Assembly (NCBI GenBank): GCA_002189035.1
Contig: NEEC01000030.1
Location: 62,001 to 126,000, forward strand
Origin: Utricularia gibba
Lineage: Eukaryota > Plantae > Magnoliophyta
DNA: 64,000 nucleotides
Direction: 5' to 3'
The position numbers were made by a program, and so were the translations under genes. The notes below the pieces were generated by a model. The model saw only the letters and a program-made list of their open reading frames with translations. It had not been told where the DNA came from and made no database searches. This document shows, in pieces, positions 8,288-48,120 of this stretch. The number at the start of each line of letters is the position of its first letter. The first letter of the stretch is position 1.

Positions 8288-10132
8288 TGTTGTTACAAGA
8301 AAAATAGTCTTGGGAAGTAATAAAAAGGTAATGCTTATGAGATCACCTTGGATGATCTTTTGAAGATGAGCTACAAATATCTTTTGAAGATCCTTTTGAG
8401 TATGAGTGTGCTCTAATATCTTTAGTATAACCACTAAAGTTAAAGTTGCTGATCCAAAAACGAAGATTGAATTCCATGCTGTGTTGACCACCTACAACCT
8501 CTACCAAATCATGGTCAGTGATCATAAAAGTTGTATTTTCTCACTTCAGGATAAAAGCAGCCTTTGGCACAAACGTTTTGGGCACTATAGCTTTAACAAT
8601 CTGAAAATATTGCAAAAGAATAAGGAAGTACTGGAATTGAAAGACATCAAGTTTGCTAATACCATATGTGAAGTGTGCCATCAAGGTAAACAGTGTAGAA
8701 AGCTCTTTTATTCCAGTGATTCACTAGCAAAGGAAAAATTAGAGCTTGTGCATATAGATGTTTGTGCACCATTTAAGGAATGTTCATTAGGGGGGAGTAG
8801 ATATTTTGTTACATTCATTGATGATTATTCACGTTATTGTTGGGTTTACTTTCTTAAAAGCAAGTCAGAAGTTCCTCATATCTTTCGAAAATTCAAATTG
8901 ATGATTGAGAATCAGAGTGGATGCTCTTTGAAGATTATTAGATCAGACAATGGAGGCGAATTGTATAATAATAGCATGAGAATGTTCTGTGAAAATGAGG
9001 GAATCATGCATCAATTCACCGTACCATATTCTCCACAACAGAATGGTATATGTGAAAGGAGAAATAGAACAATAGTTGATATCTCAAGATGCCTATTGTT
9101 TGAGAAAGATCTTCCTGTAAATTTCTGGGCTGAAGCGGTATCTACATCTGTATATCTATTGAACTTGCTTCCGTCAAGGGCAATTAGTGGAAAAACCGCC
9201 CATGAAAAATGACATGGTTATATTAAAAAGGTTGATCATCTCAGAATCTTTGGTAGTCTGTGTTTTACTTATGTACCAGACCAAAAACGAGGAAAACTTG
9301 AGAAGAAATCTATATCTGGTGTATTTGTTGGTTATAGCAACACTACTAAGGGATATAAAGTTTATGTACCTCAACAGAAGAAATTTATCTTCAGCCATGA
9401 TCTCACTTTTGATGAAGGTGCAAGGTATACTTTAATTGATGATTGCATTGGTATGAATGATGCAGAAGCTCATAAAAGACTTGAAAGGCATAGCACCCAT
9501 GTGAAAGGAGACCTCTGGACACACATGCCTCAAAACTTCTCTTACAGGAATTCAACAAACCAAGAAACTTCAGAACTCGTTCATGAAGATTCAAATCAAG
9601 TAAATGATCAGCATTCAGATGAGAATTTTCCAGCTCAAGAGAAGGAAAAGGTCACAAATCAAGATGGCTCGTCCAATGAGAATTCAGAATCAAACTCTGA
9701 ACCCCTATATGGACAATCTCATTAGGCCAATGATCAACATTCAGATGGGAATTTCGAAATCCCAGAAGAGGAGGAAGGCACGAATGCAAAAGACTCATCA
9801 ACAGATGAATCTGATGGAGAGGAACCTGATACTGATGCTGAAGATTATTACCCATCTGATCGTGATTGGCAAAGGAGGAAACGCAAAAACATCAGAGATT
9901 CAATAGATAATGAAGATACTCATGTTACTGACATTAGAAGAAGCAATATAAACAAGGCTATTACAATAAGTTTCTCCAAGTTGAATGATGATGTCCAAGA
10001 TGCTATAGCTGATATTTTGGCTGGATTATTGACAGGAGATCCAACATCATTTGAAGTGGCTGTACAAAATCCGAAATAGAGAGAGGCCATGAAAGAAGAA
10101 ATGAATTCTATACTTGAAAATGAAACTTGGGA
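8288..10132 (+). mobile_element. Rearranged Ty1/copia fragment (inverted LTR end, GAG-pre-integrase, integrase, start of RT)
   Basis: Homologous to 27149-32457. Integrase ORF 8406-9212 has LWHKRFGH, HIDVCAPF and YSPQQNGICERRNRT. The LTR piece at about 8288-8357 is oriented opposite to the coding sequence. The fragment ends at ENETW, joined to the PGDH tail. Confidence 0.9.
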
Positions 10133-10251
10133 TAGCTCCTAGGAAACAAGCCATTATGGCCATTGGAGTTGATGAGGAACCGAGGAAGGATGCTCTTAAA
10201 AAAATAGGTGAAATCCCAGCCATTGAAGAGTTCGTGTATCTTAAATTGTAG
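10130..10251 (+). pseudogene. PGDH: Duplicated 3' end of PGDH (last ~40 codons, [39 protein letters not shown])
   Basis: Reverse complement of 45683-45804 with two substitutions (10140, 10153). It has no 5' part or promoter. Confidence 0.93.
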
Positions 10252-10466
10252 CCCTTGATCCTGCCGCTGTCATTTTTGGTGCGATTTTTTACTAGCAATA
10301 ATTTAGTATCGTGTTTTTTGGAAACAAATATGTCATCGTAAGAGGCATCAATCAGCTCACATAGTAAGCAGTTTCAAACTCATATACCAGATCCTTAGCG
10401 CGATATTCAGCCTCTGATCGCACCCAAAATCGAGACTTTAGCAACCGAAACTTCTCAGCTTTTATC

Positions 10467-11430
10467 TTAAATCTCCATGGCCTGCTGGGACTGAGGCTTC
10501 TTCCTTTTGGTTTTGGAGGATTTGGTCTTCGCATTTTTTCTTCTCTTGACCTTTTCATCTGCAGGAGGCTGTGTACCCAACAAATGCTGATAAATGGAAC
10601 CCAAAGGGTCTGTTTGGAATACCGGATCCTTGAAGACTTTCTCCAACTGGTTGCTCTCTTTGAGCCTGTCGTGAAATGAAAAGTTCAACACAGGTTTTAT
10701 GTTTTTCCTCGGCCATGTAAAGAAAAACACATCATCCAAGGAAATCGAAATGGAAAGCCCTTGGGTGTAAAGAATCAAACAGTAATGCTCACACTAGTTG
10801 GTTTCTAGTTTTGCTGTTAATCTTGAACAAGATTTTCCTTGGTTCCTTGGGGAGTCTCAAATCAGGGAGGTGCTCTGAGAGAGTAGTCATATCAAAAGCC
10901 TTCAGCTTCCTCTGCCGGCTCCTTTTCCTTTTCTGTTTCTCCTGCTCGGGCAACAACATATGCAAGATGAAACAGCAAGAAAAATGTGATGCTTTCGTGA
11001 GGCAAGAAATCACAATCCTGGAAACTCTTTACAATAAAAAGGGGCATAGCTTTTCATGAACCATACCTTGCTTATCTTTTTCTCAGAAACCGAATTCCTG
11101 ACCACTACAAAACCAGAAAACCCATGACAAGAATTGATGAACTCCATTTTTAAGTTTCAACATATCAAGCATAATGCCATACCCAAACCAGGAAATATCA
11201 GCATAATGACATGTGAGGAAAATGCTTGTTTATATTCTTACGTTCATAAAACTGCATCTTCTTTGCAAACTTCTTTTCAGTACGAGTGGCCCCATCCGAT
11301 CTGACTACCAAGGTTAGCTTATCAGCAGTCAACAAGAATCAGCCGACCACAAAAGCGTTTCAACGAATAACAGTATAACAAAAGTTGTAAGGAATTTCAC
11401 ATCCCTATACCTTGTGGAATTCTTTCCCAT
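10467..11430 (-). CDS. SLX9: SLX9/FAM207A-like ribosome biogenesis protein, duplicate copy in left arm (5 coding exons)
   Basis: Mirror of 44504-45467, with ATG at 11428-11430 and the same splice sites. Upstream promoter sequence is also duplicated. Confidence 0.78.
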
Positions 11431-12314
11431 TCCCAACGATTCTGTATCCACTTTCTACCTTTTGCAACAAATCAAACTGAAGAAATAAAAAAAAAAGGTG
11501 ACCGAAATGATATTCTCTAAGTCGCACAAACAATCCGGAAGCTGCAAGGCAAATTAAGGACCAGGATTCACGTGCAGAAAGATTAGAGGCGATAGATACT
11601 TGTAAAACCATTCCCTTAAGAAATCTATTTAACACTCACGAATGCTCCACACTATCCACCAAGAACAATGTCTGGTTTTCATCTGAAATCAAGATAAGAG
11701 AGAACCAACTCACAGGCGTCCCGAAGAGTTACTACTTTTAAGACGTACTAATTTGCGCTCGCAGCGGACCTTCTCCTCAGCCGAAAAAGCGCGGAGAAAG
11801 GAATCTTCTTCAAGAAGTCCGATTAGAGGATTTCAGTGAGGAAACGGATTTGGGCCAATCCAGCGATGCTCAGCCCAATATGGAGGCCGCAGTTGTAAGA
11901 TAAAACTCAACTTTGGTCAATTTAGGAACATATCAAGTTTGCAAGGGTCAAACCGAAATACAGTAAAGGGATAAATTCAAACATTTATTATTTTTGGGTC
12001 CAAATTGGAATTAGTTTCGGCAAGCAAATCCGGAACCTATTTGGTACGTGGGTTTGTGCGTGGGTTGAATTTAATTTATTTAAATGGGATAAGTGGATTT
12101 AAGATGCAAGAGTATACATAAAAAATAGTAAATTAATAAATAAATAATGTCTTTACAAAAAAAAATGGGTTAATTTTAAAAAAATGATTGTAATGTTATT
12201 TTGTTTTGAAACATGCATCATAATGTATAAAATGAGTTATATTAAATCATAATAATTTTTATCAATATCAAAGTTCGAAAATGGAATTTGTAATCGTAGA
12301 TCATGAGAAGTTAC

Positions 12315-13854
12315 TATAACACCCTTAGAGCATTCAGTTTGAGTATAATGTTTTAAAAATAAGAAAATAAGAGTTACAATGTTTATACTTTTGTTGGTAA
12401 TATCGACCACACGTTAATGGAATATAGAATCATTATCAATAGCTGTTATGGTCTGCAACATCCATTGCTGGAGTTTAGCATAATACCTCTCTAATGATCA
12501 TGGTTATGTATGAAATCAATAAACGATGGGACCCACACCGGTATGGAGTTTGTTTTTATTAACCAATGGAGATGAAGCAGGTGCTAACTAATGGAAGGGC
12601 CACATGGCAACCTCAAGATAGAGGGGATGCTGACTCATGATGTCTCCTAGGTTCAGGTAAATAGAGTCACATTGGAAAAAGCTGGAGAATCATGGTTGAA
12701 GAGGAAGGAGGGTAGAGAATACAGCTAGTGAGAAGGGGGAAAGTTCTTGGTTCTAGTTGTAGGAAGGGATTACTTATGTAGGGAATAAGGTAAGTGGGAT
12801 GAGTGCTACTGTCTTTTAGAAGCATGTTTTGATGCTTCTCTGAAACATATGTGATAATTGTCTATGTGTTATTATATGTTGTTTTGGAAAGAGTTCTTCC
12901 CTGTTTTCATTAACCTGTTTTTCCTCCCTGTTCTTCATTGTGTGAAGAGTCCAGCAGGGCACGTCCTTCTGGTCTTGGTGCCTCAACTCTGTTTAGAGTC
13001 CCTAAAATTCTTCTTTCAAAACCTAAATTGTTTTCTTCCAAGGATTTGGTGTCCTTGTTGGTCAGTTTCCAAACAAGTGTTTTCTTTCGAGGTGTATAAA
13101 GTGCTCAATGTTCATTGTTTATGTGCTATGTGTATATATGTTAGGAAATGGAGAGGAGTGTGGACCCACATTCCTAGCAACATGGTTTTAACCATGGGAT
13201 TCATGGCTAAATATATCATACATGTCTGAGGTATCCCTATGGGATAAGCCAATCAAGAAAGACCAGGGACATGTTTTATGCATGCTATGGTCTAAGTTTA
13301 GAGGTGGTGTTCGGTTGGTGGCTCTTCTGAACACTACTAAAGGACTTAGGCATCACCTCCAAATCTTAGGAAAAGGGTCATGTATTGCCTAAGCCGAAGG
13401 GTCAAGGCGATTGGGCAAAGATAGACAATGGGACTCACTACTTGGATATGTGCTTGACTTTGAGTCTTTATGCTCAAACACTTTTTCTTCACTTCATTCA
13501 TGTTTATGTTTTACCAAACTTCAGTAGCATGACCACTCTATGTTTTAACTTGTTCCAGGTGTAGAGGGGAATGGCAGAAGGTTTGGTGATTAACCAAAGT
13601 AGGAGTTTAGCTGTAGAAGTTGTGGTAGATCAAGAATAGCTTTTGGAACCTTAACTACGTTGTGAGGAATATGCTTAGTAGGTTGGACATAGTTCCTTTT
13701 GCATGTTTGAACGGTTGTGAGTTAGTGTACATGTAGCCATCTTAACGTTATTTCTCCATGTTACAAAGGGGTTAAGTCGCCTTGAGTCCCAACGTTTGAT
13801 AGGACTTGGCAGTCATGCCTCATGCCTCTTGGGCCCTGGGCATGGGTCCTGACA
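12315..13854. mobile_element. Putative ~1.5 kb gypsy (Tekay/Del-like) solo LTR
   Basis: Ends TATAACACCCT... and ...GGGTCCTGACA resemble TGTAACACCC/GGGTCGTGACA-type termini. Flanks GTTAC and ATAAC match only 3/5, so the TSD is not confirmed. No coding capacity. Confidence 0.4.
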
Positions 13855-14176
13855 ATAACAAGCTAACATCTTTCATTGGATAAATGTGACTCAAAAATGA
13901 CGTTTGAAAATAGGATAACATTATGAATATTTCTTGGCTATTTCTAAAAATGACTCAAAAAACCATTACATAGCACTAAAAGATAAGTTTTAAAATGACT
14001 TTGCATCAAGGTTACATCTTACTAATATTCGCTTCTATGTGTGTATGTAAACCTTAAGAATTGTCTCGTTTTCATAAGTTTTAGAGATATTATTATAACG
14101 TAGTACAATTCAATAACCTATGTTTTCTCCATATTTGATCATCACCCCTACACCTTACCCTTAAAGAAAAATTAGA

Positions 14177-15650
14177 TCAAATGTATCTTGTCAACAATAT
14201 TTGATAGAATCTTTTCCTTAGGTATTTGTAGAGAGTTTTCGTGTTCATCCGCTTGACATTTATGTTTTCCAGAATGCGATGCAATCTTGCAAATTCTTGT
14301 TGCATAGCTCTCAAAGAGAGTTTCTCATCCATTGAGTTATCTTTTTCATGCTCACTTATTGAATTTGACATTGTAAACAGAAGAAAGAAAAGAGAATAAA
14401 GTGAAAGAACAAAGAAACACACACAAGGTTTACCACTCAATCCCCAAGCTTCAAGTCTTTGATGCACTCCATAAGGTAGATGTTGACTCGAATAGTTGAG
14501 CTGCTTTAATGGAAATAATTCAGGCCAATTGTTGATTCCAATAGTGTTGAGTAGAGCCTTGACACTTGTTTCAACTATCTTGCTCTTACTTCTTTTAATT
14601 GGTTTCGGTGGAATGATCTTTGTCTTTAATGTGTTCACTTGGACATCATACTCATCATTCTTTAAATACTCTTCGTTAGTTTCCTGGGGCTCATCAAGAA
14701 GGATGACACACTAGATGAAAAGTTCACTTTTCATCAAGAATTTTTAATAGTACATCGTGATTTGGAAAATATCAACATCAGCTTTGCTGACCACGAATAT
14801 TCTTTACGAAATTTTTGAAGACCCAATACGTACTGAAAAATCATGCTTTTGGAAGGTGTTGTGGTGTGCAAATGCCTCAACGCAACAATATTTGATATGA
14901 CTATCTAATCTATAGAGATTAGCAACCCACGAACAAAATATGATTTTAAAGTCTGGAAAGAAATTCACCCAAATCTACCTTCAAGAGAATAAATCTCTTG
15001 GCACCATACTTTGAAAGATAGGGAATTAGGAGTTACACGTTACAAGGAGCAGTTATTGGAAGTGATAATCCCAATACACGGCAACCTAAAAGCTTGATAA
15101 CTAAAAAGTGTTAAAGTACTCAAATAATAGGAAAATCTTTAGAAGATACATGTAAAAAACTAATGGTCTTTCAAATAAAACATGTCAAGAGTATTTACTC
15201 TCAAATTAGGCTCCAACATTACAAAGCCCCAACTAAATAAAACAGGAAAGCTTAACAAATCCAATAATATTGAGTAGAGCGTCGAGTTTAGCTTCACCCA
15301 CCTTGCTCGTGGAATAATTTTTGTGTTTAATGTGTTCACTTGCGCAATATCGTCATTATTCTTTAAATATTCTTCATTATCTTGTTGGAGCTCATTATCC
15401 CCCGTTCTTTGGGAAGATTCGTCCCTGAATCTTTATCCATTTCGAAGGGAGACAAATCAGCAACATTGAAAGTTGAATGAACAGAATACTCAACACGGAA
15501 ATCTAGTTTGTATGCATTATCATTCACGAGTTCAATAACTTGGAAAGCGACATCTCAATGAGGTAGAAGTTTTGACTTCCTATTGGTAGGAAATCTCTAC
15601 TTTGTGAGATGAAGCCAAACCAAATCACCAGCTTGAAATACGACTTTATT
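14177..15650 (-). mobile_element. CRM family B remnants: two LTR-derived pieces, PPT, integrase tail and gag start
   Basis: Similar to LTR 25743-26326 (TGATGAGCCCC...). PPT AAAGAACGGGGGA near 15397-15409. Gag-start peptide SLRAMQQEFARLHRILENINV is also seen at 24736-25008. Confidence 0.75.
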
Positions 15651-15651
15651 G

Positions 15652-15829
15652 ATGCAAGAAAGACATAATCTTGGGAAGGAATAGAAAGATAATTCTTAGA
15701 AGATCACGTTGAATGAGGAAGGACCAACAACTCCAACCCAACACTTTTTATAAGTGAAACATGACTTCATGACACAAGGGTTGTGCGTCCAATCACCTTG
15801 AAGCTTTGGATTGAGGCTAATCTCAAACA
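15652..15829. mobile_element. Degenerate, internally deleted LTR of the resident copia family
   Basis: Both ends (tgcaagaaa..tcttgggaag..gatcac and ccaatcaccttgaagctttggattgaggctaatctcaaaca) match LTR 27149-27473. Confidence 0.75.
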
Positions 15830-16249
15830 CTTCCTGATGAGATCATGCATGCTATAGATTATCCCAATTAAGATAAATGACACAAGATCAATAATCCTCC
15901 ATTGATTTCAGTTGGGCCAATCACTAGATCAAGAGCAAGAAGGAATCAAGAAGTGCTTAAGAGCTTATGGGCCAATCAACCAAGCTATGTGGTGTTGGGC
16001 ATGGAATTCAACATTCTTAAAGTGCATCAACTTGATTAGAGAAGGCCCATTATTACCAAATACATTATTATTACTACTTTTCCTCAAATAAAGCCCAACC
16101 TTCATCTATTTAAGAAGTCCTTACTCTTAAGTTTGAGTTGCAAAGATCTTTCAATCTTTGAGGGCCAACTTCTTATTTCTTGAGGAATTGCTTCTTTTCA
16201 ACCAAGATATGGTTTGCCAATAACTTCTTGATTGGAGGGTCGTATCAGG

Positions 16250-16261
16250 TGGTATCAAAGC
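16250..16261 (+). promoter_or_regulatory. Primer binding site for initiator tRNA-Met (CRM-A)
   Basis: TGGTATCAAAGC, 1 mismatch to TGGTATCAGAGC, 2 nt after the LTR-terminal CA. Confidence 0.85.
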
Positions 16262-17152
16262 CAATCTTTCTCTTCTTCATCTCCTATTTATCTTGTTTTG
16301 GTTTCGTTCTCAGAAAAAAAAAAAAAAAACCAGAAACTAGTCCAGATCTATCTTGATTTGGTTATCTTGTCTTTTGCTCATCTCTGCCTCTGAAAAGAAG
16401 AACCAAGGGGGGTTTCTTATCTTTGTTTCTTCCACCCTTTTTTTCTGGATTGCTGCAAAAAGAAAAAAAAAACGTGTTGAAGGGAGAAAGAAGGTTAGCA
16501 GTTGAATTTTCAACTTTTCACACACAAGAAAAGTCAAAAAAAGAAGTTAGTCATTTGAATCCATTGAATCTTTTCTTTACCAAACAAAAGAAAAGTCAAT
16601 ATTGTACAACTTTGTCTATTGTCATACTTCTATTCCATTTTAACTCTTTTCAATTGTGTACCTACCTCTTTTGGTGTTAATCACAAAAAGTTACACTCTA
16701 TCTTTCCATTCCTACTTTTACTTAACCATTATTACTATTACCATCACCAAGTCTATCTTTCCACTCATTACCGTAGCCACTATGATCTCTTTGAACCACA
16801 CTTAGATTGATCATTTAAGGTTTACTGAGTCTTAAAGTTCAACAGGACTTGAGGTTTGGAAATTCTCTCTTTCTTGTTTTCCTTCTATCTTTCTGTTGTT
16901 ATTATCTTTCCTTCTTTTTGTCTACACTTTTCTCTCGTAGTAGGATGTCGAGCTCTAATAACCCTGCAGAAGAATAAAATGTTATGGATGTTGGTTTTGT
17001 ACTTAATGCAATGCAAAGTGAGTTCAAGAGATTGCAAAGATGCATAGAAGAGGACAGTGTTTCCCATGGAAGAATAAGAGTTCCAACACACCATAGCCGA
17101 AAGAATTCTCAACTAGAAAAAGATTCGAAATCTGAGGCTGAATAGGCAAGGC

Positions 17153-18355
17153 ATGGTGAAGTATGATTCATCTGGTGGTGATGATATGGACCGAAAATCT
17201 CAAAGAAATTGGAAGCCAAATCGTGATGTAAGATATGATTATAGACCAAGGGGTAGACACACACGTGAATACAAGGAATTTGATAACATCAAGATGAAAA
17301 TCCCTTCTTTTCAAGGGAAAAACGATCCAAATGCCTACTTGGAATGGGAGACTCGTGTGGAGCATGTGTTTGATTGTCACAACTATTCTGAAGTCAAGAA
17401 GATCAAGCTTGCTGTTATTGAGTTTACAGATTATGCCATAACTTGGTGGGATAAAGTAGTATTCAACAGAAGACGAAATGATGAAGAACCAATTCGCACT
17501 TGGGCTGAAATGAAGAGGATCATGAGAAAAAGGTTCATTACCAGCCACTACCAAAGAGATCAACACCAAAACTTGCAGAAGCTCACCCAAGGGAGCAAAA
17601 CCGTGGAAGAATATTGGCAAGAAATAGAGGTGTTAATGATTCGAGCCAATATAATAGAGAATAGGGAAGCTACAATGGCAAGATTCCTCTATGGTTTAAA
17701 CAAGAAAATCTCTCAAGTGGTCGAGCTGCAACACTATGTGGAGATTGAAGACATGTTGCATGTTGCAATAAAGATTGAGAAGCAACTAAAGTGTAAGGGA
17801 CAACATAGAGACCATCCAAAACCTACTACCTCGTGGAATGTTGCTGGAAGTAAGGAGAAGAAACCCAATTATCCTTCATTTGGGAAATCAACCAAGTTTG
17901 GACCGATGAAAGAGGGCACTGCAGATATCCGAAATCAGGAAAGAGAATTTAAGTCCTCTGGACAAACACGAAATATAAAGTGTTTCAAATGTCTTGGCCA
18001 TGGTCATATTGCTTCAGAATGCCCAAGCAAGAGGACCATGATTCTAAGGGACTCTGGAGATGTTGAATCTGAAATTGATTGTGAAAGTAGAAGTGAAGTA
18101 CAGGAGATAGATGATGGGGAACAACAACCTGTCATTGGTGAATGTTTGGTAACAAGAAGGACTTTAACCATGGATGCTAAGCCAATGGAGGAGCAACGAA
18201 AAAACTTATTCCATACACGTTGCTTTGTGAATGGGAAAGTTTGTAGCCTAATAATTGGAGGCAGTTGCACAAACGTTGCTAGTACTCTCATGGTGGATAA
18301 ACTCCATCTTCCTACTCTTAAACATCTAAAAAAGAGAGTGAAAAGAAAGACGTGA
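17153..18355 (+). pseudogene. CRM-A gag, zinc knuckle and truncated aspartic protease
   Basis: KMKIPSFQGKNDPNAYLEWE, CFKCLGHGHIASEC, CSLIIGGSCTN (catalytic D lost). An internal deletion follows. Confidence 0.88.
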
Positions 18356-32013: not shown

Positions 32014-32132
32014 AGCCACCGCTTGACAAGCTTTGGGTTGATACTTGGTAATCTACCAAGTAAAAAAACGCTGAACGGTATATAAAATACTGAAACGAAC
32101 ACAGGTTTGAGAACCTTACTGCTATGATACCA

Positions 32133-37700: not shown

Positions 37701-40099
37701 CATTCACAAAGCAACGTGTATGGAATAAGTTTTTTCGTTGCTCCTCCATTGGCTTAGCATCCATGGTTAAAGTCCTTCTTGTTACCAAACATTCACCAAT
37801 GACAGGTTGTTGTTCCCCATCATCTATCTCCTGTACTTCACTTCTACTTTCACAATCAATTTCAGATTCAACATCTCCAGAGTCCCTTAGAATCATGGTC
37901 CTCTTGCTTGGGCATTCTGAAGCAATATGACCATGGCCAAGACATTTGAAACACTTTATATTTCGTGTTTGTCCAGAGGACTTAAATTCTCTTTCCTGAT
38001 TTCGGATATCTGCAGTGCCCTCTTTCATCGGTCCAAACTTGGTTGATTTCCCAAATGAAGGATAATTGGGTTTCTTCTCCTTACTTCCAGCAACATTCCA
38101 CGAGGTAGTAGGTTTTGGATGGTCTCTATGTTGTCCCTTACACTTTAGTTGCTTCTCAATCTTTATTGCAACATGCAACATGTCTTCAATCTCCACATAG
38201 TGTTGCAGCTCGACCACTTGAGAGATTTTCTTGTTTAAACCATAGAGGAATCTTGCCATTGTAGCTTCCCTATTCTCTATTATATTGGCTCGAATCATTA
38301 ACACCTCTATTTCTTGCCAATATTCTTCCACGGTTTTGCTCCCTTGGGTGAGCTTCTGCAAGTTTTGGTGTTGATCTCTTTGGTAGTGGCTGGTAATGAA
38401 CCTTTTTCTCATGATCCTCTTCATTTCAGCCCAAGTGCGAATTGGTTCTTCATCATTTCGTCTTCTGTTGAATACTACTTTATCCCACCAAGTTATGGCA
38501 TAATCTGTAAACTCAATAACAGCAAGCTTGATCTTCTTGACTTCAGAATAGTTGTGACAATCAAACACATGCTCCACACGAGTCTCCCATTCCAAGTAGG
38601 CATTTGGATCGTTTTTCCCTTGAAAAGAAGGGATTTTCATCTTGATGTTATCAAATTCCTTGTATTCACGTGTGTGTCTACCCCTTGGTCTATAATCATA
38701 TCTTACATCACGATTTGGCTTCCAATTTCTTTGAGATTTTCGGTCCATATCATCACCACCAGATGAATCATACTTCACCATGCCTTGCCTATTCAGCCTC
38801 AGATTTCGAATCTTTTTCTAGTTGAGAATTCTTTCGGCTATGGTGTGTTGGAACTCTTATTCTTCCATGGGAAACACTGTCCTCTTCTATGCATCTTTGC
38901 AATCTCTTGAACTCACTTTGCATTGCATTAAGTACAAAACCAACATCCATAACATTTTATTCTTCTGCAGGGTTATTAGAGCTCGACATCCTACTACGAG
39001 AGAAAAGTGTAGACAAAAAGAAGGAAAGATAATAACAACAGAAAGATAGAAGGAAAACAAGAAAGAGAGAATTTCCAAACCTCAAGTCCTGTTGAACTTT
39101 AAGACTCAGTAAACCTTAAATGATCAATCTAAGTGTGGTTCAAAGAGATCATAGTGGCTACGGTAATGAGTGGAAAGATAGACTTGGTGATGGTAATAGT
39201 AATAATGGTTAAGTAAAAGTAGGAATGGAAAGATAGAGTGTAACTTTTTGTGATTAACACCAAAAGAGGTAGGTACACAATTGAAAAGAGTTAAAATGGA
39301 ATAGAAGTATGACAATAGACAAAGTTGTACAATATTGACTTTTCTTTTGTTTGGTAAAGAAAAGATTCAATGGATTCAAATGACTAACTTCTTTTTTTGA
39401 CTTTTCTTGTGTGTGAAAAGTTGAAAATTCAACTGCTAACCTTCTTTCTCCCTTCAACACGTTTTTTTTTTCTTTTTGCAGCAATCCAGAAAAAAAGGGT
39501 GGAAGAAACAAAGATAAGAAACCCCCCTTGGTTCTTCTTTTCAGAGGCAGAGATGAGCAAAAGACAAGATAACCAAATCAAGATAGATCTGGACTAGTTT
39601 CTGGTTTTTTTTTTTTTTTTCTGAGAACGAAACCAAAACAAGATAAATAGGAGATGAAGAAGAGAAAGATTGGCTTTGATACCACCTGATACGACCCTCC
39701 AATCAAGAAGTTATTGGCAAACCATATCTTGGTTGAAAAGAAGCAATTCCTCAAGAAATAAGAAGTTGGCCCTCAAAGATTGAAAGATCTTTGCAACTCA
39801 AACTTAAGAGTAAGGACTTCTTAAATAGATGAAGGTTGGGCTTTATTTGAGGAAAAGTAGTAATAATAATGTATTTGGTAATAATGGGCCTTCTCTAATC
39901 AAGTTGATGCACTTTAAGAATGTTGAATTCCATGCCCAACACCACATAGCTTGGTTGATTGGCCCATAAGCTCTTAAGCACTTCTTGATTCCTTCTTGCT
40001 CTTGATCTAGTGATTGGCCCAACTGAAATCAATGGAGGATTATTGATCTTGTGTCATTTATCTTAATTGGGATAATCTATAGCATGCATGATCTCATCA
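34712..40099 (-). mobile_element. CRM family A element, mirror copy of 15835-21222
   Basis: ORFs 37579-38781 and 36083-37255 translate identically to 17153-18355 and 18679-19851. One SNP seen (RADV vs RVDV, 20644/35290). Confidence 0.92.
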
Positions 40100-40104
40100 G
40101 GAAG

Positions 40105-41757
40105 TGTTTGAGATTAGCCTCAATCCAAAGCTTCAAGGTGATTGGACGCACAACCCTTGTGTCATGAAGTCATGTTTCACTTATAAAAAGTGTTGGGTTG
40201 GAGTTGTTGGTCCTTCCTCATTCAACGTGATCTTCTAAGAATTATCTTTCTATTCCTTCCCAAGATTATGTCTTTCTTGCATCAATAAAGTCGTATTTCA
40301 AGCTGGTGATTTGGTTTGGCTTCATCTCACAAAGTAGAGATTTCCTACCAATAGGAAGTCAAAACTTCTACCTCATTGAGATGTCGCTTTCCAAGTTATT
40401 GAACTCGTGAATGATAATGCATACAAACTAGATTTCCGTGTTGAGTATTCTGTTCATTCAACTTTCAATGTTGCTGATTTGTCTCCCTTCGAAATGGATA
40501 AAGATTCAGGGACGAATCTTCCCAAAGAACGGGGGATAATGAGCTCCAACAAGATAATGAAGAATATTTAAAGAATAATGACGATATTGCGCAAGTGAAC
40601 ACATTAAACACAAAAATTATTCCACGAGCAAGGTGGGTGAAGCTAAACTCGACGCTCTACTCAATATTATTGGATTTGTTAAGCTTTCCTGTTTTATTTA
40701 GTTGGGGCTTTGTAATGTTGGAGCCTAATTTGAGAGTAAATACTCTTGACATGTTTTATTTGAAAGACCATTAGTTTTTTACATGTATCTTCTAAAGATT
40801 TTCCTATTATTTGAGTACTTTAACACTTTTTAGTTATCAAGCTTTTAGGTTGCCGTGTATTGGGATTATCACTTCCAATAACTGCTCCTTGTAACGTGTA
40901 ACTCCTAATTCCCTATCTTTCAAAGTATGGTGCCAAGAGATTTATTCTCTTGAAGGTAGATTTGGGTGAATTTCTTTCCAGACTTTAAAATCATATTTTG
41001 TTCGTGGGTTGCTAATCTCTATAGATTAGATAGTCATATCAAATATTGTTGCGTTGAGGCATTTGCACACCACAACACCTTCCAAAAGCATGATTTTTCA
41101 GTACGTATTGGGTCTTCAAAAATTTCGTAAAGAATATTCGTGGTCAGCAAAGCTGATGTTGATATTTTCCAAATCACGATGTACTATTAAAAATTCTTGA
41201 TGAAAAGTGAACTTTTCATCTAGTGTGTCATCCTTCTTGATGAGCCCCAGGAAACTAACGAAGAGTATTTAAAGAATGATGAGTATGATGTCCAAGTGAA
41301 CACATTAAAGACAAAGATCATTCCACCGAAACCAATTAAAAGAAGTAAGAGCAAGATAGTTGAAACAAGTGTCAAGGCTCTACTCAACACTATTGGAATC
41401 AACAATTGGCCTGAATTATTTCCATTAAAGCAGCTCAACTATTCGAGTCAACATCTACCTTATGGAGTGCATCAAAGACTTGAAGCTTGGGGATTGAGTG
41501 GTAAACCTTGTGTGTGTTTCTTTGTTCTTTCACTTTATTCTCTTTTCTTTCTTCTGTTTACAATGTCAAATTCAATAAGTGAGCATGAAAAAGATAACTC
41601 AATGGATGAGAAACTCTCTTTGAGAGCTATGCAACAAGAATTTGCAAGATTGCATCGCATTCTGGAAAACATAAATGTCAAGCGGATGAACACGAAAACT
41701 CTCTACAAATACCTAAGGAAAAGATTCTATCAAATATTGTTGACAAGATACATTTGA
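40105..41757 (+). mobile_element. Mirror copies of the copia LTR remnant and CRM-B remnants
   Basis: Reverse complement of 14177-15829. Confidence 0.75.
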
Positions 41758-42079
41758 TCTAATTTTTCTTTAAGGGTAAGGTGTAGGGGTGATGATCAAA
41801 TATGGAGAAAACATAGGTTATTGAATTGTACTACGTTATAATAATATCTCTAAAACTTATGAAAACGAGACAATTCTTAAGGTTTACATACACACATAGA
41901 AGCGAATATTAGTAAGATGTAACCTTGATGCAAAGTCATTTTAAAACTTATCTTTTAGTGCTATGTAATGGTTTTTTGAGTCATTTTTAGAAATAGCCAA
42001 GAAATATTCATAATGTTATCCTATTTTCAAACGTCATTTTTGAGTCACATTTATCCAATGAAAGATGTTAGCTTGTTAT

Positions 42080-43619
42080 TGTCAGGACCCATGCCCAGGG
42101 CCCAAGAGGCATGAGGCATGACTGCCAAGTCCTATCAAACGTTGGGACTCAAGGCGACTTAACCCCTTTGTAACATGGAGAAATAACGTTAAGATGGCTA
42201 CATGTACACTAACTCACAACCGTTCAAACATGCAAAAGGAACTATGTCCAACCTACTAAGCATATTCCTCACAACGTAGTTAAGGTTCCAAAAGCTATTC
42301 TTGATCTACCACAACTTCTACAGCTAAACTCCTACTTTGGTTAATCACCAAACCTTCTGCCATTCCCCTCTACACCTGGAACAAGTTAAAACATAGAGTG
42401 GTCATGCTACTGAAGTTTGGTAAAACATAAACATGAATGAAGTGAAGAAAAAGTGTTTGAGCATAAAGACTCAAAGTCAAGCACATATCCAAGTAGTGAG
42501 TCCCATTGTCTATCTTTGCCCAATCGCCTTGACCCTTCGGCTTAGGCAATACATGACCCTTTTCCTAAGATTTGGAGGTGATGCCTAAGTCCTTTAGTAG
42601 TGTTCAGAAGAGCCACCAACCGAACACCACCTCTAAACTTAGACCATAGCATGCATAAAACATGTCCCTGGTCTTTCTTGATTGGCTTATCCCATAGGGA
42701 TACCTCAGACATGTATGATATATTTAGCCATGAATCCCATGGTTAAAACCATGTTGCTAGGAATGTGGGTCCACACTCCTCTCCATTTCCTAACATATAT
42801 ACACATAGCACATAAACAATGAACATTGAGCACTTTATACACCTCGAAAGAAAACACTTGTTTGGAAACTGACCAACAAGGACACCAAATCCTTGGAAGA
42901 AAACAATTTAGGTTTTGAAAGAAGAATTTTAGGGACTCTAAACAGAGTTGAGGCACCAAGACCAGAAGGACGTGCCCTGCTGGACTCTTCACACAATGAA
43001 GAACAGGGAGGAAAAACAGGTTAATGAAAACAGGGAAGAACTCTTTCCAAAACAACATATAATAACACATAGACAATTATCACATATGTTTCAGAGAAGC
43101 ATCAAAACATGCTTCTAAAAGACAGTAGCACTCATCCCACTTACCTTATTCCCTACATAAGTAATCCCTTCCTACAACTAGAACCAAGAACTTTCCCCCT
43201 TCTCACTAGCTGTATTCTCTACCCTCCTTCCTCTTCAACCATGATTCTCCAGCTTTTTCCAATGTGACTCTATTTACCTGAACCTAGGAGACATCATGAG
43301 TCAGCATCCCCTCTATCTTGAGGTTGCCATGTGGCCCTTCCATTAGTTAGCACCTGCTTCATCTCCATTGGTTAATAAAAACAAACTCCATACCGGTGTG
43401 GGTCCCATCGTTTATTGATTTCATACATAACCATGATCATTAGAGAGGTATTATGCTAAACTCCAGCAATGGATGTTGCAGACCATAACAGCTATTGATA
43501 ATGATTCTATATTCCATTAACGTGTGGTCGATATTACCAACAAAAGTATAAACATTGTAACTCTTATTTTCTTATTTTTAAAACATTATACTCAAACTGA
43601 ATGCTCTAAGGGTGTTATA
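42080..43619. mobile_element. Mirror copy of the putative Tekay-like solo LTR
   Basis: Reverse complement of 12315-13854. Confidence 0.4.
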
Positions 43620-44056
43620 GTAACTTCTCATGATCTACGATTACAAATTCCATTTTCGAACTTTGATATTGATAAAAATTATTATGATTTAATATAACTC
43701 ATTTTATACATTATGATGCATGTTTCAAAACAAAATAACATTACAATCATTTTTTTAAAATTAACCCATTTTTTTTTGTAAAGACATTATTTATTTATTA
43801 ATTTACTATTTTTTATGTATACTCTTGCATCTTAAATCCACTTATCCCATTTAAATAAATTAAATTCAACCCACGCACAAACCCACGTACCAAATAGGTT
43901 CCGGATTTGCTTGCCGAAACTAATTCCAATTTGGACCCAAAAATAATAAATGTTTGAATTTATCCCTTTACTGTATTTCGGTTTGACCCTTGCAAACTTG
44001 ATATGTTCCTAAATTGACCAAAGTTGAGTTTTATCTTACAACTGCGGCCTCCATAT

Positions 44057-44083
44057 TGGGCTGAGCATCGCTGGATTGGCCCA
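44057..44083 (+). promoter_or_regulatory. Pair of site II-like motifs (TGGGCT, GGCCCA) upstream of the SLX9-like gene
   Basis: Motifs at 44057-44062 and 44078-44083, just before the probable pyrimidine-rich 5' UTR. Site II motifs are common in plant ribosome-related promoters. Mirrored at 11851-11877. Confidence 0.45.
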
Positions 44084-44503
44084 AATCCGTTTCCTCACTG
44101 AAATCCTCTAATCGGACTTCTTGAAGAAGATTCCTTTCTCCGCGCTTTTTCGGCTGAGGAGAAGGTCCGCTGCGAGCGCAAATTAGTACGTCTTAAAAGT
44201 AGTAACTCTTCGGGACGCCTGTGAGTTGGTTCTCTCTTATCTTGATTTCAGATGAAAACCAGACATTGTTCTTGGTGGATAGTGTGGAGCATTCGTGAGT
44301 GTTAAATAGATTTCTTAAGGGAATGGTTTTACAAGTATCTATCGCCTCTAATCTTTCTGCACGTGAATCCTGGTCCTTAATTTGCCTTGCAGCTTCCGGA
44401 TTGTTTGTGCGACTTAGAGAATATCATTTCGGTCACCTTTTTTTTTTATTTCTTCAGTTTGATTTGTTGCAAAAGGTAGAAAGTGGATACAGAATCGTTG
44501 GGA

Positions 44504-45467
44504 ATGGGAAAGAATTCCACAAGGTATAGGGATGTGAAATTCCTTACAACTTTTGTTATACTGTTATTCGTTGAAACGCTTTTGTGGTCGGCTGATTCTT
44601 GTTGACTGCTGATAAGCTAACCTTGGTAGTCAGATCGGATGGGGCCACTCGTACTGAAAAGAAGTTTGCAAAGAAGATGCAGTTTTATGAACGTAAGAAT
44701 ATAAACAAGCATTTTCCTCACATGTCATTATGCTGATATTTCCTGGTTTGGGTATGGCATTATGCTTGATATGTTGAAACTTAAAAATGGAGTTCATCAA
44801 TTCTTGTCATGGGTTTTCTGGTTTTGTAGTGGTCAGGAATTCGGTTTCTGAGAAAAAGATAAGCAAGGTATGGTTCATGAAAAGCTATGCCCCTTTTTAT
44901 TGTAAAGAGTTTCCAGGATTGTGATTTCTTGCCTCACGAAAGCATCACATTTTTCTTGCTGTTTCATCTTGCATATGTTGTTGCCCGAGCAGGAGAAACA
45001 GAAAAGGAAAAGGAGCCGGCAGAGGAAGCTGAAGGCTTTTGATATGACTACTCTCTCAGAGCACCTCCCTGATTTGAGACTCCCCAAGGAACCAAGGAAA
45101 ATCTTGTTCAAGATTAACAGCAAAACTAGAAACCAACTAGTGTGAGCATTACTGTTTGATTCTTTACACCCAAGGGCTTTCCATTTCGATTTCCTTGGAT
45201 GATGTGTTTTTCTTTACATGGCCGAGGAAAAACATAAAACCTGTGTTGAACTTTTCATTTCACGACAGGCTCAAAGAGAGCAACCAGTTGGAGAAAGTCT
45301 TCAAGGATCCGGTATTCCAAACAGACCCTTTGGGTTCCATTTATCAGCATTTGTTGGGTACACAGCCTCCTGCAGATGAAAAGGTCAAGAGAAGAAAAAA
45401 TGCGAAGACCAAATCCTCCAAAACCAAAAGGAAGAAGCCTCAGTCCCAGCAGGCCATGGAGATTTAA
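44504..45467 (+). CDS. SLX9: SLX9/FAM207A-like ribosome biogenesis protein
   Basis: Exons 44504-44523, 44634-44692, 44830-44867, 44993-45141 and 45269-45467, all GT-AG and in phase. They give MGKNSTRSDGATRTEKKFAKKMQFYE...RSRQRKLKAFDMTTLSEHLPDL...VFKDPVFQTDPLGSIYQHL...AMEI*. The family is recognised from memory of plant SLX9-domain proteins. Confidence 0.8.
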
Positions 45468-45682
45468 GATAAAAGCTGAGAAGTTTCGGTTGCTAAAGTC
45501 TCGATTTTGGGTGCGATCAGAGGCTGAATATCGCGCTAAGGATCTGGTATATGAGTTTGAAACTGCTTACTATGTGAGCTGATTGATGCCTCTTACGATG
45601 ACATATTTGTTTCCAAAAAACACGATACTAAATTATTGCTAGTAAAAAATCGCACCAAAAATGACAGCGGCAGGATCAAGGG

Positions 45683-48120
45683 CTACAATTTAAGATACAC
45701 GAACTCTTCAATGGCTGGGATTTCACCTATTTTTTTAAGAGCATCCTTCCTCGGTTCCTCATCAACTCCAATGGCCATAACGGCTTGTTTCCTGGGAGCT
45801 ATCCTTCCCACGCTCATGAAGCTTACATTAACGTTCCCCTCCGCCAGGATACTCCCAACTTTTCCGATCATTCCCGGCTGATCGACCTGCCGGCAGAGTA
45901 TGATGCTGCCTTCCAAGCTCACATCCATATCGAAAGTACCCACTTTTGTCAAGTGTGGGATCCCGTCCTTCAACTTTCCCTCAACTGTGATATCCCCTGT
46001 ATCCGAAATGGCGCTGGCGAACTTCGATTCGACGTTTGCCATGTGGAGCTGGATCCATTCAAGTGGACTGGCAGGGGATCCGTCAAGGACCAGGTGTTCC
46101 TCGGTAATGAATAAACCTCTCTGTTTGGCGACGAAGTCGGCATTCACAAGGTTGATAAAGATGTTTGTGACTGGCTCAATTAAGCCCTTGGTGATCATGG
46201 AACGGAGAAGACTTGTGTCGAGGTCCTCTGGAGATCTCGCGGAGCCGTAGGAGATTTTCAGAGTTTTGATTCCACTACCACCTGCAACTAGTTGAACTGC
46301 AACCCTACCGAGCTTTTCAGCAAGTGAAACGAATGGTTTTAGCTCATTGAGAACCTAGGGAAGGATCATGATGAGCGTGAGCTATATAACTTTTACAAAA
46401 AAACACAACCAACTTGGCATCAAGGGTGAAGGGCATGGATGCAATACCTCTTCAGAAACCATGGGTGCATTAACCGCTGAAGAAGCAAATTCGCCTTTTA
46501 AAGCTCCAATAACAGCCTCAGCTATTTCAACGGCAACTTCTTCCTAGGTATAACACAGCAAAGCAAAGTGCAAGAATTAGAAACACGCACACTACCATGT
46601 ATCAGTTGTTGGAAACATGCAAACCTGCGCTTCCATTGTACTTGCACCAAGATGAGGAGTAGCTGTTACATTCCCATGCAGCACCAATTCATTATCTTTC
46701 TCTGGCGGTTCTTCTGTGAAAACATCAAGGGCTGCCTGAAACAAAAGGGAACACAAACATCAGGGAGTTTTGCTTCCGCATAATGAGGATCATTCAAGCC
46801 AAAGTAACAAGATCTTGTTTTTTTGCAACGAGCATCGACCTGGGAAACGATTCCAGAATTAATAGCCTTCACCAGATCTTCTTCATCAATAATCCCCCCT
46901 CTTGCAACATTAATGATCCGAACACCTTTCTTCATCTTGGCAAAAGTTACCTCGTTCAGCATTTTTGATGTGCCTGCGGTGAGAGGCATGTGGAGTGAAA
47001 TGAAGTCAGCAGAAGCAACAGCTTCATCAAAGCTCACAAGCTCCACACCCATGGCACGTGCACGGTCCGCAGACGCATACGGATCGTGTGCGATTATGTG
47101 CATTCCCAGACCCCTTGCGCGTCTTGCAAACTCTGATCCAACCTTTCCAAAACCAATAACACCAAGTATTTTCCCAGCAAGGGAGACTCCAACATGCTTA
47201 CTCCTCTCCCATTTTCCTGTTGATGGTAAGTAACAGAAATTAGAGAAAAGTACAGTTTCCCATGTAACTGCAACCCCGAATAGCAAGTCCAAAAAAACCA
47301 ATAGAATCTATTTCCATCACTAGAATTCTCAAAATCAAAGTTCACATTTCAAAAGGAAAAGTTGTCTTGGTTCGTTAGAACATTGAACGAATATTTAATA
47401 TGCACTGCAGAACCGATCGTCAGTGTGGACATTGATAAAAGAAAAGAAGAAAATTGAAACGTTAAACGAGAATCTCCAGCGCTCATATAATCAATAAAAA
47501 AAAGTTGAAGGACAAGCTAGTATAATAAAACATATAATCACCAACTTCAGGCATAGAATTGGTAGAATTTAATTGCAACAAGAACGATCTCAAAACTAAC
47601 CAGCCTTAACTGAAGCATTTGCTTGAGCAATATTTCTCGCCATGGAAGTGAGAAGCGCGATGGCATGTTCAGCAGCAGCCACCGTGTTAGCCGTCGGTGC
47701 ATTCACCACTAAACATCCATGTTCAGTCGCAGCCGCCAGATCGACATTATCAATTCCGACTCCTGCTCTTCCAACGACTTTCAACCGTCCTCCGGAAGAC
47801 TCAAACACATCGCGACTCACTTTAGTCCCGCTCCTCACGATCAGCCCATCGCAGAGTGAGATTTTCGAGCAGAGCTCGTCAATAGAGAGGTTATACGAGC
47901 AGTCGACATTTGCAAACTCTTTCAGCAGATTCAAACCTGCATCTCCAAGTTTCTCTGAGACCAGAATCGTTGGCTTGGTGCTCAACGATAGGACAACGAA
48001 ACGGCAGCTCCTTCGGCGGCGGTGGAAGGAGAATCCGGTGACTACGGCTGTACCGGGGATTTCCCCTAGTCGGAATAGGGATAAGGTAGCGCGCGACGTT
48101 GGAGGTGCGAGAGGTGCCAT
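45683..48120 (-). CDS. PGDH: D-3-phosphoglycerate dehydrogenase, plastidial (~591 aa, C-terminal ACT domain)
   Basis: Exons 48120-47601, 47216-46840, 46735-46625, 46543-46448 and 46354-45683 splice in frame. Transit-like N-terminus, [40 protein letters not shown]. Confidence 0.96.

What the first reader, a model, noticed from the sequence alone, without database searches (positions are those of the whole stretch)
10130..45804. Giant gene-bearing inverted duplication: ~13.2 kb near-identical arms around a 9.3 kb spacer
More than half the window is one inverted repeat. Every ORF between 10130 and about 22830 has a reverse-strand twin whose coordinates sum to 55934; nearer the centre the sum is 55986. 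In spot checks I found only one internal SNP (20644/35290), one 52-bp indel and two edge SNPs, despite arms made mostly of dead retrotransposons. The event is therefore either very recent or maintained by arm-to-arm gene conversion, as in sex-chromosome palindromes (mammalian Y, willow W). No TSD or transposase marks it as a TIR element. It is the best candidate here for an undescribed system: a TE-built palindrome that doubles one gene and could yield dsRNA.
Basis: partly seen in the sequence, partly recalled or inferred. Interest (0 to 1): 0.88.

Follow-up and report, generated by a model that had tools for sequence, protein, structure and literature searches.

The report
Young 13-kb mirror duplication, TE-primed
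A plant assembly holds a real-looking 35-kb mirror-image duplication that doubles one small gene; its edges look like a recent DNA-break repair accident seeded by two old inverted retrotransposon copies, which is a known kind of event, and no independent reads confirm the new join.

Summary
L 10130-23356 and R 32630-45804 mirror each other over 13.2 kb. They differ by 1 internal SNP, 2 SNPs in the outermost 24 bp, and one complex 63-vs-11 bp scar.

All 13 mismatches sit in the innermost 151 bp (8.6% diverged). Comparison with 150 homologues shows decay on both copies, so these are old inverted Ty3/gypsy fragments.

- The right arm is ancestral at its outer end, because PGDH runs across 45804 uninterrupted.
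- The left arm is ancestral at its inner end, because the gypsy element runs across 23507 uninterrupted.
- The left arm starts mid-exon against a truncated copia RT, with 3 bp of microhomology.

Best reading (about 0.5): a recent double-strand break was repaired by fold-back or one-sided invasion between the old inverted gypsy copies. About 13.2 kb of the right arm was copied, and the end was captured by microhomology joining.

Rivals are an assembly artefact (about 0.25) and an old palindrome re-homogenised by conversion (about 0.12).

- Public data were contigs only, and none listed bridges the new junction.
- One accession about 1% diverged looks single-copy.
- Only a small SLX9-like gene is fully doubled; PGDH contributes 40 codons.
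- A dsRNA role has no support.

The scan noted similar palindromes elsewhere in this genome. This is a known kind of structure, of modest interest.

The parts
10130..23356 (.). Left arm, near-identical core (13,227 bp). Inferred to be the new copy.
   Evidence: It mirrors 32630-45804. It begins mid-exon of a PGDH fragment, directly against a copia RT.
32630..45804 (.). Right arm, near-identical core (13,175 bp). Inferred to be the template, because it is ancestral at its outer end.
   Evidence: The PGDH reading frame runs without a break from 46198 across 45804 to the stop at 45683.
10130..10153 (+). Outer junction J1. Copia RT (ending ...NETW) is fused to the PGDH last exon. The microhomology is GGA at 10130-10132. 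Two L-specific transitions lie at 10140 and 10153.
   Evidence: Homology to the spacer copia runs to 10132. The R alleles keep the PGDH sequence; the L allele at 10153 changes Val to Ile. Clustering p is about 1e-5.
23357..23507 (-). Old inner margin, left: the tip of Ty3/gypsy copy G (protease region). It is contiguous with its gag in the spacer.
   Evidence: There are 13 mismatches to the right tip in 151 bp (K2P 0.092). Derived residues are found on both copies.
32479..32629 (+). Old inner margin, right: the tip of the inverted gypsy copy G'. It is 5'-truncated and carries a W-to-stop change. It abuts 20 bp and then a copia LTR.
22837..22899 (-). 63 bp kept intact in L (open gypsy ORF). It is replaced in R (33087-33097) by 11 bp made of two short pieces of the same 63 bp. 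This is a complex deletion scar, derived in R.
   Evidence: ORF 22579-23046 is continuous only in L.
20644..20644 (.). The only internal SNP: L has C, R has T at 35290. It is a CHG site.
23508..32478 (.). Non-mirrored centre. It holds the gypsy G gag and 5' LTR (to about 26327), an old copia fragment (26325-27083), a third gypsy fragment (27079-27145), and a young copia.
27146..32458 (-). Young, intact Ty1/copia element in the spacer. It has a 1315-aa ORF, 329-bp LTRs with 1 mismatch, and a tRNA-Met-type PBS. Its flanks do not match (TTCCC vs CAATG), so there is no TSD.
10398..11743 (-). SLX9-like gene, left copy. It has 6 exons and a 154-aa CDS from 11430 to 10467.
   Evidence: Spliced contigs of run X6. 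CDS rebuilt. Weak Pfam SLX9 hit in the last exon (E 0.12).
44191..45536 (+). SLX9-like gene, right copy (CDS 44504-45467). It is identical to the left copy, including about 1 kb upstream.
45683..48120 (-). Intact PGDH (D-3-phosphoglycerate dehydrogenase) gene, with three coding blocks. Only 45683-45804 (40 codons) and the 3' UTR lie in the arm.
8359..10132 (+). Truncated copia 'C' (integrase to the start of RT), forming the left side of J1. It is 95-96% identical to the spacer copia.
15835..21226 (+). Old Ty3/gypsy element H inside the arm (gag, RT-RNaseH, integrase; LTR K2P 0.094). Its twin is at 34708-40099.
21228..26327 (-). Ty3/gypsy element G. It runs RNaseH, RT, protease, gag, 5' LTR. 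It crosses the arm/spacer border without interruption.

Best explanation
This is a recent, non-fixed inverted segmental duplication made by faulty repair of one double-strand break.

**Before the event**
Two old, about 9%-diverged fragments of one Ty3/gypsy family lay in opposite orientation about 9 kb apart. G lay on the left and G' on the right. The right one was followed by old TEs, the SLX9-like gene and PGDH.

**The event (all steps inferred)**
1. A break occurred left of G and left a 3' tail ending in G.
2. That tail paired with G', either by folding back on its own strand or by invading the sister chromatid.
3. After the flap was trimmed about 151 bp into the homology, the tail was extended along the right arm for 13.2 kb.
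4. The new end was captured by the other broken end, inside a copia RT, through a 3-bp microhomology (GGA).
5. Low-fidelity fill-in, or cytosine deamination of exposed single strands, next to that join left the two L-specific transitions.

**The result**
The product is a palindrome whose centre is the old inverted repeat plus spacer. It doubles the SLX9-like gene and 122 bp of PGDH coding sequence.

**Shown versus inferred**
The anatomy, the polarity of each junction and the two-sided age of the inner margins are shown. The order of repair steps and the enzymes involved are inferred.
For: - The identity profile is sharp. The innermost 151 bp are 8.6% diverged. Beyond them there is 1 SNP in 13.2 kb, plus 2 SNPs in the last 24 bp.
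- The inner-margin differences are derived about equally on L and R when set against 150 homologues. A third fragment (27079-27145) has its own private changes. These are old copies, not fresh synthesis errors.
- Each arm keeps one ancestral junction. PGDH is continuous across 45804. Gypsy G is continuous across 23507. This is what copying R outward from a primer inside G predicts.
- J1 joins unrelated sequences (copia RT and a PGDH exon) with only GGA shared.
- The strand geometry works. G is sense on the minus strand and G' is sense on the plus strand, so they are complementary within one resected strand.
- Yeast work shows that inverted repeats up to 30 kb apart and up to 25% diverged fold back in single-stranded DNA. 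It also shows that they divert break repair into BIR (PMC10164571; PMC6103520).
- An accession about 1% diverged (X3) has an arm-only contig at depth 34.5. Its arm-plus-flank contig is at 40.9. So the duplication is not old and shared.
- The window lies well inside its contig, and the centre is a 9-kb asymmetric spacer. Classical fold-back read artefacts do not look like this.
Against: - No listed contig of three DNA samples bridges J1. In all of them the arm runs on into PGDH, and copia runs on as copia.
- Run X1 is identical to the window over the 2.4 kb of arm laid, apart from 2 letters that are probably the two edge SNPs. It gives no sign of the left-arm alleles.
- The scar in R cannot come from copying R into L, because L holds the intact 63 bp. 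The SNP at 20644 raises the same problem. Both need later mutation or an allelic template, which sits badly with a very young event.
- The left flank of J1 shows no remnant of the rest of G, so a deletion must also be assumed.
- The two edge SNPs (2 in 24 bp, 8.3%) equal the inner-margin divergence, which is just what the old-palindrome rival predicts.
Confidence: 0.5

Rival explanations
1. Assembly artefact, whole or partial. Either the left arm does not exist as a second copy, or both copies exist but their palindromic adjacency is a false join. The join could run through the high-copy young copia in the spacer, or through the gypsy homology.
For: - No contig listed bridges J1 in any of X1, X3 or X4.
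- X1 is the run closest to the window (0.97 of words), and it shows only the right-arm form at the edge.
- The spacer copia has exact LTR ends but non-matching flanks, as expected if two loci were joined through it.
- The region is a nest of TEs, where assemblies are weakest.
- Polishing with multi-mapped reads would make two arms identical.
- The two SNPs next to J1 could be consensus errors where only a few reads span.
Against: - J1 shares only 3 bp, so no assembler would create it without reads.
- An artefact needs a chimeric molecule at J1 and also a mis-threading inside G.
- The arms differ by transitions at CG/CHG sites and one complex indel, not by the homopolymer indels typical of long-read consensus errors.
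- The centre is a 9-kb non-palindromic spacer with truly diverged inner tips, unlike missed-adapter or fold-back reads.
- The window is interior to its contig.
- Contigs are known to prune a roughly 10-40x link hanging off a 200-1000x repeat, so the absence is weak evidence.
Confidence: 0.25
2. An old palindrome, about 8-9% diverged and several million years old, whose interior was recently overwritten by long-tract arm-to-arm conversion. Unconverted margins were left at both ends.
For: - Both ends show the same divergence: 2 of 24 bp outside (8.3%) and 13 of 151 bp inside (8.6%).
- An unrepaired large loop inside a converted tract would explain why the 52-bp heterology survives.
- Other palindromes of this genome are reported to have identical arms with diverged mirror margins (s1-197785, s1-210021; not checked here).
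Against: - In X3, about 1% diverged, arm-only contig depth (34.5) is not above arm-plus-flank depth (40.9). A shared old palindrome predicts about 1.5 times higher.
- The inner edge of the right tip coincides, within 2 bp, with the start of a third, independent gypsy fragment (27079). This suggests a TE-family boundary, not a duplication breakpoint.
- A single conversion tract of 13.2 kb that stops 24 bp short of the end of homology is unusual.
- There is no trace of further mirrored PGDH or esterase sequence in the left flank.
Confidence: 0.12
3. A fresh fold-back without a pre-existing inverted repeat. In this reading the diverged inner 151 bp and the scar are errors of low-fidelity synthesis at the start of the new strand.
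For: Mutation clusters and complex indels near breakpoints are known for replicative rearrangements (established knowledge). Three apparent tandem double substitutions were seen.
Against: - Polarisation against 150 homologues puts about half of the derived states on each copy.
- One 'tandem double' resolves into one change per lineage, from an ancestral ATG.
- One-sided synthesis errors cannot produce this pattern.
Confidence: 0.03

Closest known systems
Inverted-repeat-primed palindromic duplication after a double-strand break (fold-back / intra- or inter-molecular annealing of inverted repeats feeding BIR). Shown in yeast (PMC6103520, PMC10164571). By my own knowledge also Tetrahymena rDNA and mammalian gene amplification.
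   Same: - An older short inverted repeat plus spacer forms the centre.
- Identical arms start inside the repeat and run outward along one ancestral side.
- The spacing (about 9 kb) and divergence (about 9%) are within the range that works in yeast.
   Different: - The yeast products are dicentric or hairpin-capped chromosomes. Here the copy stops after 13.2 kb and is sealed by a microhomology join, giving a stable interstitial duplication.
- This is a natural plant locus, and no genetic dependency was tested.
Gap repair with ectopic template ('filler DNA', one-sided invasion, SDSA plus end joining) in plants, and large expansions of the plastid inverted repeat by break repair (my own knowledge of this literature; papers not read here).
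   Same: One end is homology-driven and the other is joined by microhomology. Flanking genes or gene fragments are copied to a new place.
   Different: The template lies in cis and inverted, so the product is a palindrome and not a dispersed or tandem copy.
Sex-chromosome palindromes maintained by arm-to-arm gene conversion (mammalian Y/X; willow W, PMC7023750, seen in the list but not read).
   Same: Large gene-bearing inverted arms more than 99.9% identical, around a unique spacer.
   Different: - No evidence of age or of conservation across accessions.
- The one comparison available points to absence in a diverged accession.
- The chromosome and the sex system are unknown.
- The arms are mostly dead TEs.
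Natural inverted gene duplications that silence paralogues through dsRNA (for example Arabidopsis PAI1-PAI4, maize Mu killer; my own knowledge).
   Same: An inverted duplicate of gene sequence.
   Different: - There, a promoter reads through both arms.
- Here, the twin genes point outward, the arms are 9 kb apart, and no hairpin transcript or small RNA was seen or tested.

Membership tests
IR-primed fold-back / one-sided-invasion inverted duplication | A pre-existing inverted repeat, older than the arms, flanks the spacer. | tested here: met
   The tips are 151 bp at 8.6% divergence, with derived states on both copies. The adjoining cores are essentially identical.
IR-primed fold-back / one-sided-invasion inverted duplication | One arm is continuous with ancestral sequence at its outer end. 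The other arm ends in a novel junction with little or no homology. | tested here: met
   PGDH is continuous across 45804. J1 joins a copia RT to the PGDH exon with GGA only.
IR-primed fold-back / one-sided-invasion inverted duplication | The duplication is absent from the ancestral state (related genomes lack the novel junction and the second copy). | tested here: inconclusive
   Contigs only. No bridging contig is listed. X3 depth suggests a single copy. Contigs cannot prove absence.
Conversion-maintained (sex-chromosome-type) palindrome | Arms more than 99.9% identical around a unique spacer. | tested here: met
   (core K2P about 8e-5).
Conversion-maintained (sex-chromosome-type) palindrome | The palindrome is much older than the arm identity implies: it is shared by diverged lineages, with arms homogenised within each. 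| tested here: not met
   In X3, about 1% diverged, arm-only depth (34.5) does not exceed arm-plus-flank depth (40.9). This is a single, contig-based data point, so weak. The old margins at both ends remain compatible with this family.
Conversion-maintained (sex-chromosome-type) palindrome | Location in a non-recombining, sex-limited region. | not testable with these tools
   The organism is only placed near Lamiales. The chromosome is unknown.
TIR transposon / Foldback element | A target-site duplication flanks the terminal inverted repeats, plus a transposase or a family of copies. | tested here: not met
   The flanks are ACTTG and TTCCC, so there is no TSD. The only enzymes inside are retrotransposon gag/pol.
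Fold-back read / missed-adapter assembly artefact | A spacer-less perfect palindrome, usually at a contig end. | tested here: not met
   The centre is a 9-kb asymmetric spacer with diverged inner tips. The contig continues at least 10 kb before and at least 21 kb beyond the window. Other kinds of misassembly are not excluded.
hpRNA / dsRNA-producing inverted duplication | A transcript that reads through both arms, or small RNAs from them. | not tested
   The only RNA run laid (X6) shows normal spliced SLX9-like and PGDH mRNAs. The twin genes are transcribed away from the centre.

The most novel reading that the evidence does not exclude
This locus may be one of many gene-bearing palindromes in a small plant genome that are old and are periodically re-homogenised arm to arm. 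In this reading the matching divergence of about 8.5% at the outer 24 bp and the inner 151 bp is the unconverted rim of an old structure. That would mean a genome-wide palindrome-renewal process outside any known sex chromosome.
Probability: 0.1. Interest if true: 0.55.

Novelty: new member of a known kind. Interest (0 to 1): 0.3.

Why it matters
If it is real, this is an unusually legible natural footprint of how a pair of old inverted transposon fragments can turn one DNA break into a 13-kb palindrome. One step duplicates a whole gene with its promoter and creates a new gene fragment.

It would show in a plant what has so far been demonstrated mainly in yeast and cancer models. Together with the other palindromes noted in this genome, it could be used to measure how often such events occur and how long they persist.

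If it is an artefact, it is a useful warning for palindromes in this assembly.

Tried and rejected
- **Exact-product look-ups.** I looked up ORFs that cross J1, and the PGDH last exon as a control, in public assemblies. Nothing was on record, not even the control, so this is uninformative (one search used wrong coordinates).
- **Homologue search with the J1-crossing ORF.** No candidates were found.
- **Exact-pattern scans of JGI metagenome contigs.** I scanned for J1 and for the ancestral PGDH junction. Both gave zero hits, so the species is not in that collection.
- **Silene / sex chromosome idea.** It was suggested by another note's word 'Retand'. It was rejected because the flanking esterase is closest to Lamiales proteins at no more than 75% identity, on a long branch. 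I take 'Retand' and 'CRM' to be TE lineage names (own knowledge). A guess of Utricularia stayed unproven.
- **A larger ancient palindrome reaching the outer inverted gypsy pair (3389-6994 vs 54799-59049).** There is no mirrored homology outside the TE, and no PGDH or esterase remnant on the left.
- **One-sided error-prone synthesis as the source of the inner-margin mismatches.** Rejected by polarisation.
- **The 20 bp at 32459-32478 as templated filler.** Only a 10-bp match lies near J1, found post hoc, with no whole-length match.
- **Contig depth in X1 as a copy-number test.** The arm-only contigs lie in multi-copy TE sequence, so they are unusable.
- **Other checks.** A bacterial promoter/terminator scan and a small-hairpin check at 13352-13385 gave nothing relevant.
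- **Not done.** The spliced 154-aa protein has no reference form, so I did not send it to family or homologue searches.
Full report
**1. Observation**

A self-comparison of the window finds one dominant inverted repeat. 10130-22836 mirrors 45804-33098 over 12,707 bp with three mismatches and no gap.

22900-23507 mirrors 33086-32479. Between the two blocks L carries 63 bp where R carries 11 bp.

In fact all 13 of its mismatches lie in the innermost 151 bp (L 23357-23507, R 32479-32629). The next 457 bp are identical.

So the near-identical cores are 10130-23356 and 32630-45804 (13.2 kb), around 9,273 bp. An 8.6%-diverged rim sits at the inner end. At the outer end, 2 mismatches fall in the last 24 bp. 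Neither clustering is chance (p about 1e-8 and 1e-5).

**2. Anatomy**

The right flank carries an intact PGDH gene on the minus strand (coding blocks from 48120 down to the stop at 45683) and an At4g34215-type esterase. The arm boundary at 45804 falls inside the last PGDH exon, and the reading frame runs straight across it. So the right arm is ancestral at its outer end. Only 40 codons of PGDH are duplicated.

In the left arm that fragment is fused at 10130 to the start of the RT domain of a truncated copia. Copia homology runs to 10132, so the two partners share just GGA.

Next to PGDH, tail to tail, lies a small six-exon gene. Run X6 is listed as 'DNA?' but is clearly RNA, because its contigs skip five GT-AG introns. 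It gives the splice pattern. The rebuilt CDS is 154 aa, with a weak SLX9 match in the last exon. This gene, with about 1 kb upstream, is the only gene doubled in full. The two copies point away from the centre.

The rest of each arm is repeats:
- an old Ty3/gypsy element H (15835-21226; LTR K2P 0.094);
- a gypsy-like 5' fragment;
- the 3' part of a second gypsy element G.

G lies on the minus strand. It runs uninterrupted from RNaseH (21638) through RT and protease into gag and its 5' LTR (to about 26327). It therefore crosses the arm/spacer border at 23507, so the left arm is ancestral at its inner end.

The right inner tip (G') is cut off at 32479. It abuts 20 bp and then the LTR of a young, intact copia (27146-32458).

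**3. Age of the inner rim**

I compared the two tips with 150 homologues from a profile-free search.
- L keeps the consensus residue at five of the differing codons (G13, E18, L33, W37, R42).
- R keeps it at three (C21, A28, S29).
- At codon 26 each copy has made its own single change from ATG.

Both copies have therefore decayed independently from a working ancestor. A third fragment of the family (27079-27145) has private changes of its own.

The rim is old paralogous TE sequence. It is not a burst of errors from a fresh junction.

**4. Mechanism**

Each arm keeps one ancestral junction. The identical cores start inside an old, diverged inverted repeat. The far end is a microhomology join between unrelated sequences.

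This pattern is expected if a break left of G produced a 3' tail ending in G. That tail would pair with the inverted copy G', on the same resected strand or on the sister chromatid. It would then be extended along the right arm for 13.2 kb. Finally it would be captured by the other broken end inside the copia.

The strand polarity fits. G is sense on the minus strand and G' is sense on the plus strand, so they are complementary within the minus-strand tail.

Yeast experiments support this route. Inverted repeats near a break divert repair into annealing between the repeats and into BIR. In single-stranded DNA, repeats 30 kb apart and up to 25% diverged still fold back, with flap removal (PMC6103520 and PMC10164571).

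The two L-specific transitions lie 8 and 21 nt beyond the microhomology. They would fit low-fidelity fill-in starting at the join, or deamination of exposed single strands. This is inference. All three arm SNPs are C-to-T-type changes at CHG, CG and CHG sites.

**5. What does not fit**

- The 63-bp block is intact in L and scarred in R. The scar keeps two short pieces of the 63 bp, as in repeated microhomology joining. A copy of R cannot hold what R lacks. So the scar, and probably the SNP at 20644, must be later. Alternatively the template was a sister or homologous R without the scar.
- The young copia in the spacer has exact LTR ends but non-matching flanks.
- G' and the third fragment begin at the same element position. 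This points to an earlier history I could not resolve.
- The outer 24 bp are as diverged (8.3%) as the inner rim. That is what an old palindrome overwritten by a long conversion tract would leave.

**6. Independent data**

All runs on offer were contigs. I laid four of them on 8000-13999.

In X1 the contig covering the laid arm is identical to the window apart from 2 letters, most likely the two edge SNPs. X4 is a low-depth run of the same study, also close. X3 is about 1% diverged.

In each of the three, the contig that covers the arm runs on across 10130 into PGDH sequence. The copia contigs run on as copia past 10132. No listed contig bridges J1.

This is not proof of absence. J1 hangs a 10-40x unique path on a 200-1000x repeat family, and contig builders prune such links.

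The one quantitative hint comes from X3. An arm-only contig (12283-12489) has depth 34.5. The contig that is about one-third arm and two-thirds single-copy flank has depth 40.9. A duplicated arm predicts a ratio near 1.5. So the duplication is probably not present in that accession. This speaks against an old, shared, conversion-maintained palindrome. It leaves a young or private event, or an artefact.

Look-ups by exact protein, a homologue search and metagenome scans for J1 were all blank and uninformative.

**7. Artefact?**

The classical long-read fold-back artefact is a spacer-less palindrome at a contig end. This is not one. The centre is 9 kb and asymmetric. The tips are truly diverged. 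The contig continues on both sides.

J1 shares 3 bp, so it must stand in at least one read. The arm differences are transitions and one complex indel, not homopolymer errors.

Against that:
- the region is a TE nest;
- the spacer copia lacks a TSD, as a join through a repeat would;
- no independent read support was found.

I put an artefact, whole or partial, at about one in four.

**8. Comparison and verdict**

The structure works like inverted-repeat-primed palindromic duplication. Of that kind's three features, the two structural ones tested here were met, and the third (absence from related genomes) stayed inconclusive.

It resembles sex-chromosome palindromes only in arm identity. The age criterion was not met in the one test available. 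It is not a TIR or Foldback element, because it has no TSD and no transposase. Nothing supports a dsRNA role.

The organism is a Lamiales-like plant. The Silene/sex-chromosome framing has no basis.

Other notes of this scan report several more near-identical palindromes in the same genome. Some have diverged margins, and one is half-confirmed by short reads (not checked here). So the process, or the assembly behaviour, is recurrent.

This is a new example of a known kind of rearrangement. It has unusually clear footprints, but its key junction is still unverified.

Noticed in passing
window 27146-32458: A young, apparently autonomous Ty1/copia. It has an uninterrupted 1315-aa gag-pol ORF, 329-bp LTRs with one mismatch, a tRNA-Met-type PBS and a polypurine tract. 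The 5 bp flanking its exact LTR ends differ (TTCCC vs CAATG). It is therefore either a recombinant of two insertions or sits on a rearrangement or assembly join.
   Followed up: partly
window 27079-27145: A third fragment of the same gypsy family, 93% identical to the arm tips. It begins at the same element position as the right tip (TTACCAAAC...) and is cut by the copia insertion. This hints at an older duplication of an already truncated fragment.
   Followed up: partly
window 3389-6994 and 54799-59049: A second, outer pair of inverted GC-rich Ty3/gypsy sequences, 92-94% identical, brackets the whole palindrome. The right one is a full element (49598-59712; LTR K2P 0.038). No mirrored homology was found outside the TE, so they are probably just two family copies.
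   Followed up: yes
window 8287-8359: The left flank is a mosaic. A gypsy fragment ends at 8287. Then come 68 bp of copia LTR in one orientation (8288-8355). Then copia internal sequence in the opposite orientation (from 8359). This is another inverted junction, at family-level identity.
   Followed up: no
window 10398-11743 / 44191-45536: Run X6, listed as 'DNA?', behaves as RNA. Its contigs skip five GT-AG introns of the SLX9-like gene and cover the PGDH 3' end. PGDH and the SLX9-like gene converge, with about 100 bp between their observed transcript ends.
   Followed up: partly
window 50633-51256: An ORF with a weak Pfam 'Putative gypsy type transposon' (Transposase_28) match lies on the plus strand inside the right-flank gypsy element, whose pol is on the minus strand. 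This is the antisense gene another first-reader note describes.
   Followed up: no
window 13352-13385: Contigs of X1 and X3 show an 'opposite strands' joint here that the window lacks. No inverted repeat was found at the site, so it probably comes from another copy of the repeat elsewhere in the genome.
   Followed up: partly
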